The position numbers and the translations under genes are program-made. Positions 2,653 to 14,785 of a stretch of DNA of 64,000 nt are shown here, one piece after another. Each line of letters starts with the position of its first letter. Within the stretch, counting starts at the first letter, position 1. Source of the stretch: Octopus sinensis (taxonomy: Eukaryota); NCBI RefSeq assembly GCF_006345805.1, contig NC_043011.1, positions 66,910,464 to 66,974,463 of the forward strand, written 5' to 3'. Under the pieces are notes generated by a model. That model worked only from the letters and a program-made list of their open reading frames with translations, was not told the origin of the DNA and did no database searches.

Positions 2653-2853
2653 ACTCTTTTGCTCTTTTACTTGTTTCAGTCACTTGACTGCGGCCATGCT
2701 AGAGCACCGCCTTTAGTCGAGCAAATCGACCACAGGACATATTCTTTGGAAGCCTAGTAATTATTATATCCGTCTCTTTTTTCCAAACAACTAGATAACA
2801 GAGAAGTAAACACACCAACATCGGTTGTCAAGCGATGTTGGTGGGACAAGTAC

Positions 2854-2899
<46 letters not shown>

Positions 2900-3031
2900 G
2901 GCGGGCTTCATTCAGTATCCGTCTACCAAATCTACTCACAAGGCTTTCGTCAGCCCCAGGCTATAGTACTGAACCCAGAACCATGTGGTTTGTAAGCAAG
3001 CTACTTACCACGCAGCCACTGCTGCACCTAC
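2653..3031 (-). mobile_element. tRNA-derived octopus-type SINE
   Basis: Minus strand has a tRNA-like head, an internal microsatellite and a GAGTAAAA-like 3' tail. Near-identical family copies occur at 5168, 26715, 28553 and 55299. Confidence 0.85.
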
Positions 3032-4116
3032 GATGAACTTTAGCGATTAACGTCATTTATTTCACTGGATAATCGTCGATAATGTTTTGAACAGGCTGTA
3101 TAAATTATGGTGTCCTTACGAATTCTGTTTTATACAGTGGAAACCTTTCACCCATAGTCTACCATATCCGAACACGCTGCTAATTCTTATAGCCAGAAAG
3201 CTGGGTCGCTGAAAGCGAAGCAATGATCACCCACTACATTTCTGTAGAACATTTTTACTAGAACATTTTTCTAGAATGTGGAGAAAGGGTATTGCATACA
3301 TACCAGTACTGATTTTTTGTAATATTGGGATTTAATTTTTACGGCTCTTCAAATTTATACACGTACATACTTGCAGTAGCATAATAAATACTTATGAATG
3401 TGTAATAAAGTTACAACAGCTGTTTAGAATTCTGGCTCGATCCTAACCTGTATATGGAGAAAAAAGTTTGCTTATTCACAATTTTAGATCGGATATCATT
3501 TAAAATGAATTCGGTAAGCAATGTTAGTGCTAGTACTTTCTTTAGTGTTTAAATGACCTTCTTTTCTAGGATGATATGAACATGAAATATATTAGTAAGG
3601 ACTACAAATAATTTGAAAACCTTTCCTTCCGAAATCTCTCTATTAATAATCAGTATTATCACTGAACATTTCTTCAATAGCTCTTTAATTCGCAACAGCT
3701 ACCTAAAGCCATCAAAATTATATATTAAAAATGTGCATGTTGTTAAAATTACTTTGAAAGGAATAACGCATGCGTATCTGTATTATGAAACTAGCACCTC
3801 ATTCTCATAAAAGTAATTCCTGTGCATGCAGTAAGTTGTGTGCTACGTATAACATAAGTTAAAATACCATTGCAAGTACACGGGTACTTGATGCAATTTT
3901 CTGCAACTGCCCTTACATCGGGACCAACTTTTAACGTTCTCTTATAGAATTCACATTGCAACAAACATGCAATATGTATTACATGTCTAATGCATGCCAT
4001 TTACTGTGGACACTTCTATTTCAATTAATACCTTATAATATGACCTTAATAGGGCACCTGTTTTGATATATTCATTTGCTTTCTTGTAATTAAATATTAG
4101 AATAATTACACCGTAA

Positions 4117-4674
4117 TACTGTGTTGTCCAGAAAGTCCGTGCTGATTTTTAAAGGAAAGAAAAAGGTCAATAAATACCTGCCATTACATTTTCAATCTAC
4201 CAAATATGAACCATTTTGTTGCAAAATGCGTCTCCATCTTTCCTTTAACTTGAAAATACCCTCTTCCCAGAATTGGGGTGGTTTCATGGCAAAAAATTCA
4301 CCAGGGTATATTTTCCAAGGAATTGAAATATTTACCATTAAGACAATTCGGCAGAGACATGAATAAGTGGAAATCCGAAGGAACAATATCTGGTGAGCAT
4401 GGAGGCTGGGGTATGTCATCCCAGCCGAGCTGCAGCAATTTTTGTCTGGTTCCTAAAGCATCAAATGCCGAAAATGCACTTTCTTATCTTCTATTTTAAA
4501 GGGTTACAGAATTAACACAGGTTATAGGAACATAAACATTCTTCCACGAATAGCTTAAATTTTGTTCTAAATGGAGCTGCAGTCAAATCCTATTTTATGG
4601 ACACAACCATGTTCTAAAATAAGTCGAAAGGTAAGCTACTATAAATCGTCACAAACTTTCCGGACAACCCAATA
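4117..4674 (-). mobile_element. Internally deleted mariner element with both TIRs
   Basis: TIRs TActgtgttgtccagaaagtccgtg (4117) and cacaaactttccggacaacccaaTA (ending 4674). Minus strand encodes PPCSPDIVPSDFHLF and FWEEGIFKLKERWRRILQQNGSYLVD*. Confidence 0.85.
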
Positions 4675-5167
4675 CTATTGGAAAAGAATATTTTTCTTTT
4701 CCAGATATTTGGCATTATGGTTTATACTCATGATATTATTAGTGTAACCATGTCGAAAAGGTTTACAAACTATTTCACTGATAACAAAATGACAACAGCC
4801 TTTATTACAGAAATGTTTCAACAGAATTATTTTCAATAAAAACAAACGGATCTTTCAAAGTAATTTAGTTATAGTAATATATTGTACATTCAGCGGCAGT
4901 AGAAATGTTTTGCTTATTCCACCAGAGTTTGCCTGAAATAAATATCGAAGTATTGTGAAAACTTACTTTTAAAATGAAAGAATACATTTTCAGACATGTA
5001 CGCATGTGAAATTCTAACGACCTTAACTAAAGATAGATGCTAGAATACTCTGATCGATTAAAACACTTACAAATAAGAAACAAGGGTTTGTGAGAGATTA
5101 TTTAAAATTATAGCAACCATGACTCTTCGTTACATTTATGTTAATGTGGTAAGTTCTAAACCACGTT

Positions 5168-5601
5168 CTTTACTATTCTTTTGCACGTTTCAGTCAGTTG
5201 CCTGTGGCCATATTGGAGCACCGCCTTTAGTCGAGCAAATCTACCCCAGGACTTACACTTTGTAAGCCTAGTACTTATTATATCAATTTCTTTTGCCGAA
5301 CCGCTAAGTTACAGGAACGTAAACACACCAGCATCGGATGTTAAGCGACGTTGGGGGAACAAACAGAGACACACAAACATACAGACACACGCACACTCAC
5401 ACACACACAAACATATATATATATATACATATACACGATGGGCTTCATTCAGTTTCCGTCTACCAAATCCACTCACAAGGCTTTGCTCGGCCTGAGGCTA
5501 TAGTCGAAGACACTTTTGCCCAAGGTTACACGCAGTGGGATTGAACCCAGAATCATGTGGTAGATAAAGAAGCTACTTACCACACAGCCACTCCTACGCC
5601 T
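5168..5601 (-). mobile_element. tRNA-derived octopus-type SINE
   Basis: Same family as 2653-3031, with head and body both present. Confidence 0.85.
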
Positions 5602-6254
5602 GAATAAAATATCTAAATAAAATGTCTTTCCTTCCTTGCACGATTATTCCGTCCCTAATGACTTTAGGAAAATATTCGTAATATTCGTAATATGGAACAA
5701 TCTATTTAAATCGTTACTTTGACAAGCACTGCTTTTATTTTAACAAATATAATTAAAGTAATGCAAGCTTCGTACCAAAATCATGCTATTAAATTTATAT
5801 CTGCTATTGAATTTATACCATTTTAAACAATATCGTTTTTTTTCATCAGAAGCATTTCTCAAAATTCTTGTATTTACTGCAATGTAAAATACGAATCTAA
5901 ATTATATATTCAAGTATTGTTTTATGGTTTATATTTTAACATCAACTCTATTCTGGGCTCACATTCACCTTTGACATGACTCCGAACAGTCGGAAGAATA
6001 AGGAAGGAAAAGTAAATACATTGTTATCAAATATCAAAATCACTTCTCCTGTACATAGTTCTATAAAATAAACATAAGCGTTAACTTCACTGTCAATTAT
6101 AAAATTATCAAGATGTTAAGCCTATAGAATAATTAAAGCAAATTCTATTCAAAGTAGCTAAAAATGAATATTTATCTATTCATATTCCCTTGAATGTATC
6201 TTAACACAGTTTGTACTGACATTTCTATAATTAGTTAATAGATATATAAATATT

Positions 6255-6295
<41 letters not shown>

Positions 6296-6312
6296 ATGTG
6301 TGTGTGTGTATG

Positions 6313-6391
<79 letters not shown>

Positions 6392-6926
6392 GAATGTATG
6401 CATGTGAGTATGTATGACGAGTTTGAATGAGAGAGAATAGGATGAAACAGAATAGATATATTACTATTCGGGCATTCGTCGTGAGAAGACGTACTTTTCA
6501 TAGCTCCGCTCAAGTCAGTAGCCAAAGAAGCATATTTCAACTCAAGCCAGCATAAACTCTTCTTGTTTCTAGTCCCAGAACCTTTGAATTCTACAATTCT
6601 ACAATCCTACTATTCTACTCTTTTACTACCATCGGAGGATAAATTTATACAAATCTATATACAACCTGGAGAAAGAAATATAAACCAAAACTAAACCCAA
6701 GACTAGTTCTAAAACTAGTCCCGTGAGTACAATTATTTTCTCTTGATCTGTATTAAACACACCGCTCATCCTGATTTGTACTAAATACATTGAACTCTCC
6801 CACACACACTCAGATATAGCCACGCATTTCCATGTATATCGACACAAACTTTTCAACGGTGTATTCACTATTATACATCAAGCCATCAATAACTGACGTA
6901 CAGTGTATAATACTGTCCCACTGAAT

Positions 6927-8120
6927 ATGGCCAATAATATTCAAACACGCCCCTGGGTTGAAAATGAAATCACTGCACTGATAAACGCTTGGTACACTCA
7001 CCACAACGAAGCTAATGTTTACAGTAAAATAGCTGAAAAATTAGCAAAATAATCCTTTCACAGATATGTAAAACACATCGAAAACAAAATAAAAGAGATC
7101 GTAAGAACATTTCCTATTTTCCACACACATATGGCAACACTAGAAGCCAGCCTTGACAATGAATGTAGTGCACCAAATGACCCAACTCCAACAGGTCAGG
7201 GGTCACTTCAACGACCCGATAGCCAGCAACAAACAATATCTGACCTAATTCCTCCCAACACTACCTTGGCAAGCCAGGACTCACTATCGCAACAACAACA
7301 GCCTGCTTCTGCTACTACATTGGAAGCACCTTGTTTGGCACCAGTATCTGACCCGATTCCACCCAGCCCTACTGTTGCACGTCAAGTTTCCCTGCTGCTA
7401 CAGCAACAACAACAACAACAACAACACTCTGCTACTGCCACTACAATAGGATCACTGACCAACGTGCCTGCCAGAATAGAAAAATCACTTCTACACCCAC
7501 GTCAAACACCCTGCCATAACCATTCTCAAGGCAACTGTAGATTCGGCCCCAGCGGCCCCAACAACAAGGGACGCTGTGCTTTCTTCCATCCTACCTTATG
7601 TCGTAGACTTGTCAAGGGCACTTGTCCATATGGTATAACGGGAAAAAACTGCCCTCACCTTCACCCCAAATACTGTCCTAAATACAGAGTTCATGGTCCT
7701 GATCCCAAATATGGATGCACAAAACGCAATGGATGCACGTTCTTCCCTCCTAAACTGTGCCAAACTTCTCTGTCACTAAGGATGTACCTGAACCCATAAT
7801 GCAACCACCACCATCTGAAGGGCACAAAACAATCGTAAAATAAATATAAACAGCAACAGAGGAGATCTACGACAACAACAAAAACAAAATACAACCACGT
7901 TTCCCCTCCTACAATCCAACAGCGTAGACAGAACCATGAAAAAACACCAAATAACGCCAACATGAAATATGTATCCTCTGACCAAGTGGCAAACCAAACA
8001 AGTAACACTTTTTTACTGACTTAACTAGAAAATATGAAGGCCGACCTAAGCCAGGAGATCCAACGAGCTATTAGCAACCACCTATGCAAATCACAAGGAC
8101 CACACACCTACTACTAACAA
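6927..8120 (+). pseudogene. LINE ORF1: Myb/SANT-like domain, Q/P/T-rich linker, four CCCH-like fingers, C-terminal coil (disrupted by stops)
   Basis: ATG 6927 is in frame with ORF 7131-7799 (204 nt apart) with a single TAA at 7050-7052. N-term RPWVENEITALINAW...NVYSKIAEKLAK*SFHR...IENKIKEI. Fingers start CHNHSQGNC, CRRLVKGTC, CPKYRVHG and CQTSLSLR...CNHHHLKGT. Confidence 0.75.
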
Positions 8121-8161
8121 GAAACTCATAGACACACAGCTCCATACAAGAACTACCCACA

Positions 8162-11126
8162 ATGTTACCACTGAACAACATAAAACATAACTTAGAACAA
8201 TGCAAACATCAAACTTCCCTTACCTCGACATTCCTGTTAAATGTACGTGGCATTAACCCATCAATTATTGCCAAAAAATGGAAGATCCCATATATAGAGA
8301 GTTGGCTTGCCGAAACGGCACATTGCTTCCCTTTCTTTATCTTTACTGAGACTCACCTGAACAACACCCATATGGATGCCGAGGTGAAAATAAAAGATTT
8401 CACCATTGTTCATGTGGATCGCACAGACTGAAATAAGGGAGGGACAGCCATCTTTATCCATGACTCCTTTTCACTTGATGCCAAGGACATATTTTCCAAT
8501 GGCTATTGTGAATCTGTATCACTATTCAGCAAGGCCAAGGACATAATAATAGGTGGTCTTTACAGGCCTCTCCAACACCTCTAAAGAGCTTTGAAGAGTG
8601 CCTTAGCAAAATCAAGTCCTTCCTTCGGAAGTACAACTCTGGAAACATACTAGTGATGGGTGAATTTAACCTCCCTCATGTGAACTGGCCCACAAATACT
8701 CTGAAGTTAGGCAAATTCTCTACATCAGATAGGGCAGCAGCAGAACTGCTTTTAATCTAATGGATGAATATTTCCTGACTCAGCTAGTGCTCGAACAAAC
8801 GAGACAGAATAAAACGATCTTGGATTTGGTATTGACCAATCACTCTAGCTTCGTTGACAGTATTTCAGTTGAAAAAACTCTCCTCTCAGACCACGACATG
8901 GTACTCTGCAATTTTAATTCGCGACATATAAAAACCAAACCAGCCAATCCTACTCCATGGCACTCATTTGACAACATAAACCTCCACAAAGCGGACTGGG
9001 GAGCAATCAGAAAGGATCTGTCTTTCATCGACTGGTCTTTTACTCTCAATTCCACCCATATTGAGACCGCATGGCAGCACTTTGAGAACATTGTCACCTA
9101 GACATGCTCTAAACACGCTCCCACGAAATCTACTAACACAAACAGAAACCGGCTCCCTAAAAAGAAAGAAACACTCATCAGGCGCATCAAAAGACTAAAA
9201 AAAAAATCAACCAATTAAAATATTCCCACATACAACATCCACATTCAACAACAATTCAAAGGCTAGAGCTGGAAAAACGTCATCTGCAGACCGACATGAA
9301 AATCTCCATTGAAAATCAAAGAACTGTGGAGGAACAGTGGGTAACCAAAAACATCAAACAGAACCCAAAAGTGTTCTATTCTTATGCAAATAAGCATAGA
9401 ACCACTCTCTCACCCATTGGGCCCTTGATTGATGATAACGGCTTTCCCCAACACGATGCTAAAGAAATGGCAGAAACACTGTAGAAACAATACTGCTCTG
9501 TCTTTAGTGTTCCCACTGATATTGACGTAAGAGAAGCGAACGAAGTTGACTCCCAACATAAAATCTCAGACATAACCTTGACTGCCACTGACATCATAGT
9601 AGCAATAAATGAGGTCAAATACTACTCTGCTGTAGGCCCTGACAGATTCCCCGCTAGTCTCCTGAAGGAAGGTAGACACCAACTTGGAGTCCCTCTGACC
9701 AACCTCTGGAAAAATTCGTTAGACGCAGGATATATACCGAAACAGTTTCTATCCCTCGCACTCAACTATCGCCCAATCTCACTCACCTCCCACATCATTA
9801 AAGTGTTTGAAAGAGTGTTAAGATCAAGGATAGCTGACTTCCTGGAGACCCACAAACTCCTAAATGCAAATCAGCATGGCTTTCACAGTGGCAGCGTATG
9901 TCTAATACAGCTCTTACACCACATTGAAGATATACTCAAAGCCTTGGGAACAGGTTCGAACTCTGATGTCATATATCTTGACTTCAGTAAAGCGTTCGAC
10001 AGGGTAGACCATAATATCCTACTCTCAAAATTGGCAAATGTTGGAATCCGTGGAAAAGTTCTACACTGGATTAAGTATTTCCTGGCAAATAGAACACATG
10101 TTGTAGTTGAGTTCACTCAAGCCCAGCAAAAGTCACCAGCGGTGTCCCCCAGGGGACTGTCTTGGTCCCGCCACTCTTCATAATTTACATAAATGACCTT
10201 TCCAGTGTCGTACATCACTGCAAAGGGAAAATATTGAAGAAGTAGACCGAACTCAACTCCAGTCTGATCTATATGCTGTGAGTCAATGGAAAGACAGAAA
10301 TAAAATGCAACTGAACGAGAGAAAATTTGAGCTGATGAATTTTGGAAGAAATTCCTCACTAAAACAGCCATACTCTCTTCCTTCAGGGGAACCGCTCACA
10401 GCCTCTAACAATATCAGAGACTTGGGTGTAATTTTTTATGACGATCTCAGTTGGAGTGCACACATCAATAATAAGGTCGATATAGCTCGTAGGATGAGTT
10501 CCTGGATCTTAAGAACTTTCCGGTCCAGAGAACAAGGTGGCATCATACCACTTTTTTCCTCCTTTGTACGGCCACACCTCGAATACTGCTGCCCACTGTG
10601 GTCTCCCCATACAAGACAAAACATCTCGAGGATTGAATCACCCCAGAGGGTACTCTCTAAACGAATTGAAGTCATGGCTGCTCTCGATTATTGGGACCGA
10701 CTTAAAGCCTTGAAACTCTACTTTGTCCAGCGTAACCGTGAGCGGTACATCATTTGTACGATGTGGAGAATATACCGCCAACTTTGCCCAAACGACCTGA
10801 ACATTAGCTTCAAGGTTCATCCAAGACTGGGACCTCGGGCCATACGTCCCCTGCCCAATTCAAGATCACAGCATACATGTACACTGCAACATAATGTCTT
10901 TTTCTCAACAGGCCCTGTCCTATTTAACATTGTCACGAAAGAGATCAAAGAGGAAGAGGATCCCATCAACTTTAAACGGAGTCTGGATGGATTCCTTCAA
11001 AGAATACCAGGTAAGCCACCCATAATTGGATACAACTCACCCAACAAAAACTCACTACTTGAATGGACCATAAACAAAACTTGTCTTAAACAGGGTTCAA
11101 ATAATCCTATCAGGTGGTGCTATTAA
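8162..11126 (+). pseudogene. LINE ORF2 (APE endonuclease + reverse transcriptase), multiply disrupted
   Basis: APE motifs NVRG, FTETHL, VDR..GGTAIFIH, LDLVLTN. RT motifs [47 protein letters not shown]. The FADD catalytic motif is absent (deletion near 10220). Confidence 0.9.
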
Positions 11127-11190
11127 GTTAGACATGGCCTGGAGCAATCTTTGGTCGAAACATATCTAAGTTTATCTAAATTTACTCCAT

Positions 11191-11232
<42 letters not shown>

Positions 11233-13201: not shown

Positions 13202-14785
13202 TTGCGGCCAAAATTTTCAGAACGGCATTGTTTTCGTCAGAAAAATAGATATACGTTTTGTCAAAGTTGTTTTATATTCTATAACTTTCACAGACAATAA
13301 ATACAATATGAATTGTTATTGTCTGAGATTGTGGTGTAATTTGAGGGGATAATACAAAAGTTATGGATGATTTAGGGATTTACTGCAAAACCCATGGCGG
13401 CCAAAAGGATCAGAACGGTTGCTTTTACTCCGTGTTTTAGTATATTTAACCGACGAACTCTAATGTTTTGAATTTGTTTACATGACGGTTCGTTTACTAA
13501 ACATTAGTAAGAATATCTGCAGTGTACTTTGTTAATATAATTCCACTTACTCTGTTACCAATTCGTCAGCAGATTATTAAGCTTCGTAAGAAGGATAATT
13601 TAAGTATTGGGTCTATTGCAAAGATTGTTAACAAGTCAAAAAGTGTTGTTCACGGTATTCTTAAGGACTACAATGATTGTGGCTCGTGTGAAGCTAGAAA
13701 GTCTACAGGTAGGCCAAGAATAACTACCAAGAGAGAATATCGTGCTATGGTAAAGTTGGTTAAAAAGGACATGCTGCTGTACTGAAGAAAACTTTATCTC
13801 GAAAAACTGTGTCTCGTCGTTTAGTTGAACATGACCTACAAGCAAGAGCACCTGCAGTGAAGCCACTGATCAGTTCCAAGAATAAAAAGTGTCGTCTTAC
13901 TTTTGCAATGTGTTGTGGTCTCAAGAAGAATGGCAATCTGTGCATTTCAGTGATGAATCTAAGTTTATGTTATTTGGCTCAGATGGGAGAGGTACGTTCG
14001 TCGAAATGTAGGTGAAAACCTGTCGCCTAAATGCCTTAAGACTAGTGTTAAATTCGGTGGAGGAAGTGTCATGGTTTGGCGGATGATATCTGGAGATGGA
14101 GTGTGCCCTTTGATGCGATTATATGGGAAGTTAAATGCAGGAGTTTATAAACAACTTGTAAGAGATCATGTGTTGCCTGTGCTGAGAAATTCAACCAAGC
14201 GACCACCCATATTGATGCAGGACAATGCCCCATGTCACAAGGCTAAGGTGGTCATGAACTTCCTCAAGGCTGAAAAGGTTATTGTTTTGGATTGGCCTGC
14301 TCAAATCTCAGATCTCAATCCTATTGAAAATGTGTGGAATACTCTAGGAGAACGTTCGAAAGCCAGAAATCCTATAACAACCGAGCAATTATGGAATGTC
14401 CTTCAGGAAGAATGGAATAAGGTCACCCAGCAAGAAATTGAAAATTTAATTTCCTCATGCAGTCGAAGATGTCAAAGTGTGATTGAAGCTAAAGGGCTTC
14501 ACACTAAACATTAAATAATTCTAGTATTCTCTGTGCTTTTTTATTATTTTGTTATTTTTTTCAACCGTTCAGATCATTTTGGCCGCCATGGGTCTTGCAG
14601 TAAATCACTAAATCATCCATAACTTTTGTATTATCCGCTTAAATTACATTAAAATCTCAGACAATACCAGATACTATCGTATTTATAGTCTGTGAAAATT
14701 ATAGAATATAAAACAACTTCGATAAAAAATTATACCTACTTTTCACACGAAAACAATGCCATTCTGAACATTTTGGCTGCAACTG
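13199..14785 (+). mobile_element. Complete Tc1 (DD34E) element with long IR-DR type TIRs, transposase frameshifted
   Basis: TIRs ~13199-13421 and ~14562-14785, each with the motif ggccaaaa..tcagaacgg at both ends, flanked by TA. Transposase motifs GRPRITT, FSDES, QDNAPCH-(34 aa)-DLNPIENVW. Confidence 0.93.

What the first reader, a model, noticed from the sequence alone, without database searches (positions are those of the whole stretch)
6927..7835. LINE ORF1 with a hidden Myb/SANT-like domain fused to four CCCH-like zinc fingers
Seen: the ORF track starts ORF1 at 7131, but ATG 6927 is in frame and separated only by one TAA (7050-7052), consistent with a CAA>TAA change. The added 68 aa (RPW.ENE..ALINAW..N.VYSKIAEKL..F.R....NKIKEI) follow the Myb/SANT-like trihelix pattern. 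A Q/P/T-rich linker and four tandem CCCH-type motifs follow (the 3rd lacks the final His, the 4th is damaged). Knowledge: described LINE ORF1 types use RRM+CCHC, PHD, esterase or L1-type coiled-coil/RRM domains; Myb domains are known in R2 and TRAS proteins. Inference: a possible DNA-binding plus RNA-binding ORF1 architecture that I do not recall being described, and perhaps a targeting or self-regulatory module.
Basis: partly seen in the sequence, partly recalled or inferred. Interest (0 to 1): 0.8.

Follow-up and report, generated by a model that had tools for sequence, protein, structure and literature searches.

The report
Octopod LINE ORF1 with Myb-like head
A decayed jumping gene (a CR1-like LINE, probably in an octopus genome) once encoded a helper protein with a Myb/SANT-like head, where its many relatives carry a PHD finger, joined to a row of CCCH zinc fingers; this domain swap was not found in the papers searched.

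Summary
ATG 6927 is in frame with the listed ORF (ATG 7131) and separated from it only by TAA 7050-7052. Read with X at the stop, residues 8-63 match Pfam Myb_DNA-bind_4 above its curated cut-off (28.7 bits against 27; E 1.8e-6).

The reading frame does not end at 7835. It runs in one frame to TGA 8172-8174 (415 codons, five internal TAA stops) and overlaps the ORF2 ATG at 8162.

A relative in Argonauta hians, the sister of this element in an RT tree, has an intact 407-aa ORF1. Its layout is the same: a homologous Myb-like N-terminus, a low-complexity linker, CCCH fingers and a C-terminal helix. So the Myb head belongs to the element and is not a chance in-frame piece.

The zinc fingers are the conserved core of an unnamed family with 1105 hits at E ≤ 1e-3. 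The usual spacing is C-x7-C-x8-C-x3-H, C-x13-C-x5-C-x3-H, C-x8-C-x4-C-x3-H, followed by an "FLxxLExMKADL" helix. Other members carry a PHD-like finger at the N-terminus (the type III ORF1 of CR1/L2-group LINEs).

The octopod lineage therefore swapped PHD for Myb/SANT. Function is inferred only. Repbase and Dfam could not be checked. I rate it a new variant of a known kind, of moderate interest.

The parts
6638..6926 (+). Presumed 5' UTR of the LINE copy; the 5' boundary is tentative
   Evidence: A 13-nt candidate target-site duplication TTTACT(A)CCATCG lies at 6622-6634 and 11180-11191. 30 of 500 shuffles reach its score, so it is weak. The region is not alignable to the Argonauta 5' UTR.
6927..8174 (+). 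Ancestral ORF1: 415 codons in one frame, now with five internal TAA stops (7050, 7797, 7836, 8022, 8115). The terminal TGA 8172-8174 overlaps the ORF2 start.
   Evidence: The related copy P0001/L001 is open across the last four stop positions. The intact Argonauta ORF1 of 407 aa has the same layout.
6948..7115 (+). Myb/SANT-like domain (residues 8-63), interrupted by TAA 7050-7052
   Evidence: Pfam PF13837 at 28.7 bits (cut-off 27), E 1.8e-6, with X at the stop. BLASTP to the Argonauta ORF1 N-terminus gives E 4e-6 at 28% identity. The Argonauta N-terminus hits the same Pfam family in the same register, sub-threshold at 13.1 bits.
7131..7502 (+). Low-complexity linker rich in Q, S, P, L and T, with a run of eight Q; no PHD remnant
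   Evidence: The Argonauta ORF1 has a T/P/N-rich linker in the same place.
7512..7589 (+). Extra, lineage-specific CCCH-like finger (C-x7-C-x11-C-x3-H)
   Evidence: A local HMM of the family core aligns 7509-7611 to the profile's first finger (iE 2.3e-5). The finger is shared with P0001.
7599..7814 (+). Conserved three-finger CCCH core. Finger A is intact. Finger B has His>Pro. Finger C has Cys>Tyr and TAA 7797.
   Evidence: The family HMM scores 90.5 bits over 7596-7830. The ligand columns are at least 90% conserved. See the spacing census. The AlphaFold2 model has pLDDT 89. The profile hits only CCCH proteins in the PDB, and weakly.
8007..8087 (+). Conserved C-terminal helix motif 'FLLT*LENMKADLSQEIQRAI' of the ORF1 family
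   Evidence: 'FLxxLxxxK' appears in the consensus of 150 sequences. The motif is present in P0001, P0122-P0140 and the ORF1s of L002, L005, L006 and L009.
8162..11126 (+). ORF2: APE endonuclease plus reverse transcriptase, degraded by stops and frameshifts, with the stretch after the 'IYINDL' motif not readable
   Evidence: Pfam Exo_endo_phos_2 at E 1.5e-11 and RVT_1 at E 1.2e-20 on stitched pieces. It is 56% identical to the intact 933-aa Argonauta ORF2 over 486 columns.
11108..11179 (+). Conserved 3' UTR hairpin followed by two degenerate octamer repeats (TATCTAAG-like): the 3' end of the element
   Evidence: 80% identity over 71 nt to the Argonauta element. An 11-bp hairpin is predicted in both. 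The Argonauta tail is (TATCTAAG)3.

Best explanation
Window 6638-11179 (the 5' end is tentative) is an old, dead copy of an APE-type LINE of the CR1/L2 group in an octopod-like genome.

Its ancestral ORF1 (6927-8174) encoded a protein of about 415 aa with four parts:
1. An N-terminal Myb/SANT-like three-helix domain.
2. A disordered Q/S/P/T-rich linker.
3. Four tandem Cys3His zinc fingers. Three are ancestral to a large ORF1 family, and one is an extra copy.
4. A conserved C-terminal helix.

Shown: the domain content, the homology to an intact Argonauta ORF1, and that the nearest RT relatives have a PHD-like finger where this lineage has the Myb-like domain.

Inferred:
- The CCCH fingers bind the element's RNA in cis, as tandem CCCH fingers of CPSF30 and MBNL1 bind single-stranded RNA, and so take the RNA-binding and chaperone role that RRM/CCHC modules have in other ORF1 proteins.
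- The C-terminal helix helps multimerisation.
- The N-terminal head, PHD or Myb/SANT, tethers the ribonucleoprotein to chromatin or DNA at integration.

The stop at 7050 is one of five decay mutations in this copy.
For: - LINE identity: APE and RT domains lie downstream, and the ORF1 stop overlaps the ORF2 start.
- Myb domain: the Pfam match is above the curated cut-off and spans the stop.
- Intact relative: Argonauta L002 ORF1 3944-5167 is open. Its N-terminus is homologous (E 4e-6) and gives Myb_DNA-bind_4 as its only Pfam match, in the same register. It is followed by CCCH fingers, the tail helix and an open 933-aa ORF2.
- Phylogeny: the window and Argonauta ORF2 are sisters in an NJ tree, at 56% identity against about 50% for the next clade.
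- Finger family: 1105 hits at E ≤ 1e-3, with conserved ligands and spacing.
- Physical linkage: PHD + 3xCCCH + tail ORF1s sit directly upstream of related APE/RT ORF2s in L006, L009 and L005.
- Uniqueness in the sample: none of the 149 listed relatives matches a Myb HMM, while 64 of the 120 with a recognisable core have a full PHD-like motif.
- CCCH character: all 13 PDB hits of the profile are CCCH RNA-binding proteins (CPSF30 E 0.048, MBNL1 E 0.057). Relatives give sub-threshold Pfam zf-CCCH hits. The AlphaFold2 model has pLDDT 89.
Against: - No second copy of the Myb-bearing 5' part from the same genome could be found, so the family consensus at codon 42 is unknown.
- The Argonauta N-terminus alone is below the Pfam threshold (13.1 bits).
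- The single-sequence model of the Myb part is poor (pLDDT 63, with helices 1 and 2 fused). A PDB sequence search gave only noise.
- No CCCH evidence reaches significance against Pfam, the PDB or Foldseek.
- Nothing here tests RNA or DNA binding.
- The exact RT clade (CR1, Crack or L2) was not determined.
Confidence: 0.72

Rival explanations
1. Chance or chimeric juxtaposition. The 41 codons upstream of TAA 7050 are 5' UTR, or a fragment of an unrelated Myb/SANT gene or Harbinger-type Myb-like ORF, and happen to lie in frame with a LINE ORF1 that truly starts at ATG 7131.
For: The window copy carries a stop between the two parts. ATG 7131 gives a listed ORF. No other copy with the 5' part was found.
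Against: The Pfam match runs across the stop: residues 8-63 are used, and the first 41 residues alone give only 15 bits. The Argonauta relative has the homologous domain within one uninterrupted 407-aa ORF1 upstream of the same kind of fingers and ORF2. The stop is one of five TAA stops in a clearly decayed ORF.
Confidence: 0.05
2. Same architecture, but the Myb-like head is a sequence-specific targeting module. It steers integration into particular DNA such as TA-rich microsatellites, as Myb domains help R2 and TRAS/SART elements find their targets.
For: The Argonauta copy sits inside a long TA-rich array on both sides. The window copy has (AT)17 right after its 3' end and (AT)n about 250 bp upstream of its tentative 5' end.
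Against: (TA)n arrays of at least 8 units occur 54 times in this 64-kb window, about one per 1.2 kb, so nearby arrays are expected by chance. Only two insertions were seen. The candidate target-site duplication is not TA repeat.
Confidence: 0.12
3. Same architecture, but the head is SANT-like rather than Myb-like. It would bind histone tails or a host protein rather than DNA, as a like-for-like replacement of the PHD histone reader. Alternatively it acts on the element's own promoter or RNA (self-regulation).
For: It replaces a PHD-like finger at the same position in the protein. [quoted passage not shown]
Against: The only profile match is to Myb_DNA-bind_4, a family annotated as DNA-binding. 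No data here separate DNA partners from histone partners.
Confidence: 0.2

Closest known systems
Type III (PHD-type) ORF1 of CR1/L2-group LINEs (classification of Khazina and Weichenrieder 2009 and first report of the PHD in CR1 elements, both as cited in Metcalfe and Casane 2014, PMC4120745)
   Same: ORF1 lies upstream of an APE+RT ORF2. It shares the three-finger CCCH core and C-terminal helix with proteins whose N-terminus is a PHD-like finger. Relatives show 2A-like NPGP peptides, as reported for CR1, Crack, L2 and Rex1 elements.
   Different: There is no PHD. A Myb/SANT-like domain sits in its place, and there is one extra finger. The paper read here mentions neither Myb/SANT nor CCCH in these ORF1s.
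R2 element N-terminal zinc-finger + Myb DNA-binding region, and the Myb-like domain of TRAS/SART ORF2
   Same: A LINE protein that combines zinc fingers with a Myb-type domain.
   Different: R2 is a single-ORF element with a restriction-like endonuclease, and its fingers are C2H2. In TRAS/SART the Myb-like part lies in ORF2. Here the domain is in ORF1 of an APE-type element, next to CCCH fingers. No sequence comparison with those proteins was run.
Tandem CCCH RNA-binding fingers of CPSF30 (CPSF4), MBNL1 and Nab2
   Same: They are the only PDB proteins hit by the finger profile and the top Foldseek hits. Both have closely packed Cys3His units.
   Different: The matches are weak (E 0.05 and E about 1). 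The spacings x8 and x13 in fingers A and B are non-canonical. The context is a transposon ORF1.
Pfam Myb_DNA-bind_4 (Myb/SANT-like, trihelix/MSANTD-type) domains of cellular and transposon-derived proteins
   Same: The window N-terminus scores above the family's curated cut-off.
   Different: It is fused to a LINE ORF1. No close relative of the domain was found in the protein collection, so its donor is unknown.

Membership tests
APE-type non-LTR retrotransposon (LINE) | APE endonuclease domain followed by a reverse transcriptase domain in ORF2 | tested here: met
   Exo_endo_phos_2 at E 1.5e-11 and RVT_1 at E 1.2e-20 on stitched pieces of 8162-11126. The copy is broken.
APE-type non-LTR retrotransposon (LINE) | ORF1 immediately upstream of, or overlapping, ORF2 on the same strand | tested here: met
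   ORF1 TGA 8172-8174 overlaps ORF2 ATG 8162.
CR1/L2 group (Jockey superfamily) of LINEs | RT phylogeny with reference elements (RTclass1 or Repbase) | not testable with these tools
   No reference LINE library was available. Indirect support comes from three points. PHD-type ORF1 and 2A-like peptides in relatives are reported for CR1, Crack, L2 and Rex1. There is a 3' hairpin. There is an octamer-repeat tail.
CR1/L2 group (Jockey superfamily) of LINEs | 3' end with a conserved stem-loop and short tandem-repeat tail instead of poly(A) | tested here: met
   71 nt are 80% conserved with Argonauta. An 11-bp hairpin is predicted. The tail is (TATCTAAG)3 in L002 and two degenerate units in the window. 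Only two sequences were compared, so there is no real covariation test.
Myb_DNA-bind_4 (PF13837) | Profile score at or above the curated gathering cut-off (27 bits) | tested here: met
   28.7 bits with X at the stop and 33.7 bits with Q. The Argonauta homologue scores only 13.1 bits.
Myb_DNA-bind_4 (PF13837) | Three-helix Myb/SANT fold | tested here: inconclusive
   The single-sequence AlphaFold2 model has pLDDT 63. It is helical, but helices 1 and 2 are merged.
Myb_DNA-bind_4 (PF13837) | DNA binding | not testable with these tools
   This needs a binding assay.
CCCH-type zinc finger | Conserved Cys-Cys-Cys-His ligand sets | tested here: met
   All 12 ligand columns of the three core fingers are at least 90% conserved in 150 and in 39 sequences. 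82 of 120 share one exact spacing.
CCCH-type zinc finger | Significant match to a zf-CCCH profile or a solved CCCH structure | tested here: inconclusive
   Pfam zf_CCCH_4 gives E 0.08-1.3 on the window, and zf-CCCH gives E 0.006-0.03 on relatives. The PDB profile search gives E 0.048. Foldseek gives E about 1. Every hit is a CCCH protein, but none is significant.
Type III (PHD) ORF1 | PHD finger in ORF1 | tested here: not met
   There is no PHD motif in the window or Argonauta ORF1; the linker has only two Cys. Relatives have one. The window protein is therefore a derivative of the family, not a member by this feature.

The most novel reading that the evidence does not exclude
The N-terminal head of this large ORF1 family may be an exchangeable chromatin- or DNA-docking module. 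Octopod elements would have replaced a histone-reading PHD finger with a DNA-binding Myb/SANT domain. That would give an APE-type LINE a sequence-directed or chromatin-state-directed way of choosing integration sites through ORF1p rather than ORF2p. Separately, the three-finger CCCH block would be a fourth, so far unlisted, RNA-binding solution for LINE ORF1 proteins, beside RRM+CCHC, L1-type RRM/CTD and esterase.
Probability: 0.15. Interest if true: 0.75.

Novelty: new variant of a known kind. Interest (0 to 1): 0.5.

Why it matters
LINE ORF1 proteins are known to be modular, but the role of the N-terminal PHD finger in CR1/L2-type ORF1 has never been tested (PMC4120745).

A natural replacement of that finger by a Myb/SANT-like domain, with the rest of the protein kept, suggests that the head does a job either module can do, such as docking to chromatin or DNA. 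It also provides a matched pair of proteins for testing that idea.

In addition, a conserved trio of CCCH fingers is present in about 1100 unnamed ORF1-like proteins from marine animals. The ORF1 survey read here does not mention CCCH fingers. If they are confirmed as RNA binders, they would be an ORF1 RNA-binding module not included in the types listed there.

Tried and rejected
- Second copy in the window: none found by tblastn or blastn.
- Word-indexed protein search with the full ORF1: only P0001, which lacks the Myb part.
- The same search with an alignment of the two Myb N-termini: nothing.
- JGI metagenome scans with peptide patterns and with a back-translated 11-aa motif: nothing.
- Exact look-up of the 222-aa window ORF to identify the source genome: not on record.
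- PDB sequence search with the Myb part: noise only.
- Single-sequence structure prediction of the Myb part: low confidence, so not sent to Foldseek.
- Foldseek of the finger model: only CCCH proteins, but not significant.
- Upstream regions of two RT relatives: L004 is 5'-truncated and L003 is degraded, so both were uninformative.
- Supplements of two papers: they held no reference LINE sequences, so the RT clade could not be fixed.
- Source names for ten family members: none.
- Flanking (TA)n arrays as evidence of targeting: rejected because such arrays are very dense here.
- The Myb-like region as a homologue of the helical region that precedes the PHD in relatives: rejected, because an HMM of the two Myb N-termini gives no hit among 149 relatives.

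Full report
**1. The observation**

The sequence is as described.
- ATG 6927 opens a frame that meets TAA at 7050-7052 (codon 42). The frame continues through ATG 7131, the start of the listed 222-aa ORF.
- With X at the stop, residues 8-63 match Pfam PF13837 (Myb_DNA-bind_4, 'Myb/SANT-like DNA-binding domain'). The score is 28.7 bits, E 1.8e-6, against a curated cut-off of 27. With Q it is 33.7 bits.
- The match uses both sides of the stop. The first 41 residues alone give only 15 bits.
- A linker rich in Q, S, P, L and T follows (residues 69-192).
- Four Cys3His units follow the linker, at nt 7512-7589, 7599-7664, 7674-7748 and 7758-7814.
- The third unit ends in Pro instead of His.

**2. 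The true extent of ORF1**

- The frame does not end at 7799 or 7835. It runs without a frameshift to TGA 8172-8174. The five internal stops, all TAA, are at 7050, 7797, 7836, 8022 and 8115.
- The terminal TGA overlaps the ATG of ORF2 at 8162.
- P0001, on the 1915-nt ENA contig L001, is a related copy with 83% nucleotide identity to window 7300-9250. It is open across the last four stop positions and has an intact fourth finger, C-x8-C-x4-C-x3-H. That contig starts inside the linker, so it says nothing about the Myb part.
- ORF2 (8162-11126) carries APE and RT domains. It is broken by stops and frameshifts, and the stretch after the 'IYINDL' motif is not readable.
- The copy is therefore old and dead, and the stop at 7050 is one decay mutation among many.

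**3. Is the Myb-like head part of the element?**

- The closest named RT relative is from the octopod Argonauta hians (P0011).
- Its locus L002 (GCA_054771915.1) holds a nearly intact element, with ORF1 at 3944-5167 (407 aa, open) and ORF2 at 5416-8217 (933 aa, open, with the FADD motif).
- The N-terminus of that ORF1 aligns with the window N-terminus at 28% identity over 74 residues, E 4e-6 for the pair.
- On its own, its only Pfam match is again Myb_DNA-bind_4, in the same register (profile 2-67), although below threshold at 13.1 bits, E 0.13.
- It is followed by a T/P/N-rich linker, two CCCH fingers of the family's third type and the same C-terminal 'FL..L' helix.
- In an NJ tree of ORF2 with 59 relatives, the window and Argonauta elements are sisters (56% identity). 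The next clade is at about 50%.
- The two elements also share a 3' UTR segment of 71 nt at 80% identity, which forms an 11-bp hairpin.
- The Myb-like head is thus inherited within a LINE lineage. A chance in-frame fragment is unlikely.

**4. What the fingers are**

- An exhaustive HMMER search of 1.84 billion representative proteins gave 1105 hits at E ≤ 1e-3 and 169 at E ≤ 1e-10. All of the best 150 align to the finger region and tail.
- All 12 Cys/His ligand columns are invariant or at least 90% conserved, in an alignment of 150 sequences and in one of 39.
- 82 of the 120 sequences with a recognisable core share one spacing: C-x7-C-x8-C-x3-H-x3-C-x13-C-x5-C-x3-H-x3-C-x8-C-x4-C-x3-H.
- Downstream lies a conserved 'DFLxxYLExMKADL' helix.
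- A profile of the core hits only CCCH RNA-binding proteins in the PDB: CPSF30 at E 0.048, MBNL1 at E 0.057, and Nab2.
- Relatives give sub-threshold Pfam zf-CCCH hits.
- AlphaFold2 with the 39-row alignment gives pLDDT 89. The best Foldseek matches are CPSF30 fingers, but at E about 1.
- I read this as three real Cys3His zinc fingers of CCCH type. No single external match reaches significance.
- The window's first finger (C-x7-C-x11-C-x3-H) is an added copy resembling the family's first finger and is shared with P0001.

**5. The family context**

- Most full-length members carry a PHD-like Cys4-His-Cys3 motif in the N-terminal half. 64 of the 120 with a recognisable core have the full motif, and most of the rest are N-terminal fragments. 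Pfam gives sub-threshold PHD hits.
- Ten members have a 2A-like NPGP peptide at the N-terminus.
- Such ORF1s lie directly upstream of APE/RT ORF2s related to the window's:
 - L006 has an ORF1 at 2799-4058 with PHD + 3 CCCH + tail.
 - L009, from the clade next to window+Argonauta, has the same layout.
 - L005 has the finger core and tail.
- PHD-bearing ORF1s and 2A-like peptides are reported for CR1, Crack, L2 and Rex1 elements (PMC3708506; PMC4120745).
- None of the 149 listed relatives matches an HMM of the Myb-like N-termini.
- Conclusion: the octopod lineage replaced the PHD head with a Myb/SANT-like head and kept the fingers and tail.

**6. Mechanism (inferred)**

- By analogy with tandem CCCH proteins, the fingers most likely bind the element's single-stranded RNA. 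They would take the RNA-binding and chaperone role that RRM/CCHC or L1-type domains have in other ORF1 proteins.
- The C-terminal helix may drive multimerisation.
- The head is most likely a chromatin or DNA tether. Two unrelated chromatin/DNA modules (PHD, then Myb/SANT) occupy the same position, which argues for a shared docking role.
- Sequence-specific targeting is possible but unsupported. The Argonauta copy lies within a TA-rich array, and the window copy is followed by (AT)17. However, (TA)n arrays of at least 8 units occur 54 times in this 64-kb window.
- The candidate 13-nt target-site duplication is weak, with 30 of 500 shuffles matching it.

**7. Novelty**

- Full-text searches found no paper that combines ORF1, non-LTR and 'Myb SANT'.
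- For ORF1 with Myb and CCCH, or with PHD and CCCH, the searches returned a paper on the ZAP restriction factor, two reviews of retrotransposon restriction and regulation, a review of RNP granules and an unrelated review; none was opened.
- The survey of 448 Jockey-superfamily ORF1s mentions neither Myb/SANT nor CCCH.
- Repbase and Dfam could not be consulted, and the sources give the family members no names.
- I therefore rate it a new variant of a known kind: a type III-derived ORF1 with a swapped head. The secondary point is that the CCCH trio itself seems undescribed in the literature available to me.

**8. Limits**

- No same-genome copies of the 5' part were found.
- The host species was not identified.
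- The RT clade was not fixed.
- The fold of the Myb part is not supported by a confident model.
- There are no functional data.
- Only the best 150 of the 1105 hits could be inspected, so other Myb-headed members may exist below that list.

Noticed in passing
window 11108-11179; L002 8233-8310: The 3' UTR is 80% identical over 71 nt between the window and Argonauta elements, although their ORF2 proteins are only about 56% identical. It forms an 11-bp hairpin (CAGGTGGTGCTA...TAGNCATGGCCTG) followed by TATCTAAG octamer repeats. This looks like the RT-recognition stem-loop and repeat tail of CR1/L2-type LINEs.
   Followed up: partly
proteins P0169, P0175, P0178, P0189, P0190, P0200, P0208, P0218-P0220, P0243, P0250 (relatives, not in the window): Many PHD+CCCH ORF1 relatives begin with 'MGISLEQYRAAIG...', a hydrophobic stretch and a 2A-like 'G(I/V)E(P/S)NPGP' ribosome-skipping motif upstream of the PHD finger.
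   Followed up: partly
window 6927-8174: All five internal stops of ORF1 are TAA. Where the related copy L001 can be compared, they correspond to GAA, TAC and CAA codons, so they are not all C>T changes at CAA.
   Followed up: partly
window 7662-7685: 'PKYCPKY' looks like a 12-nt tandem duplication or indel relative to L001/P0001 ('PKY' only). The window version has the first Cys of finger B, as P0122 does, and P0001 has lost it.
   Followed up: partly
window 6587-6618: An (AATTCTAC)4 octamer repeat lies just upstream of the tentative 5' end. It resembles the repeat tail of a CR1-type LINE and may be the 3' end of another, unrelated element fragment.
   Followed up: no
whole window: The window is 66% A+T and has 54 perfect (TA)n arrays of at least 8 units in 64 kb, about one per 1.2 kb.
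   Followed up: partly
window 13522-13785: An ORF whose translation ('...GRPRITTKREYRAMVKLVKKD...') looks to me, from my own knowledge, like the N-terminal helix-turn-helix part of a Tc1/mariner-type transposase. It suggests another transposon remnant nearby. It was not scanned against any library.
   Followed up: no
L002 2664-3186 and 8310-10826: The intact Argonauta element lies inside a long TA-rich compound microsatellite that continues on both sides of it.
   Followed up: partly
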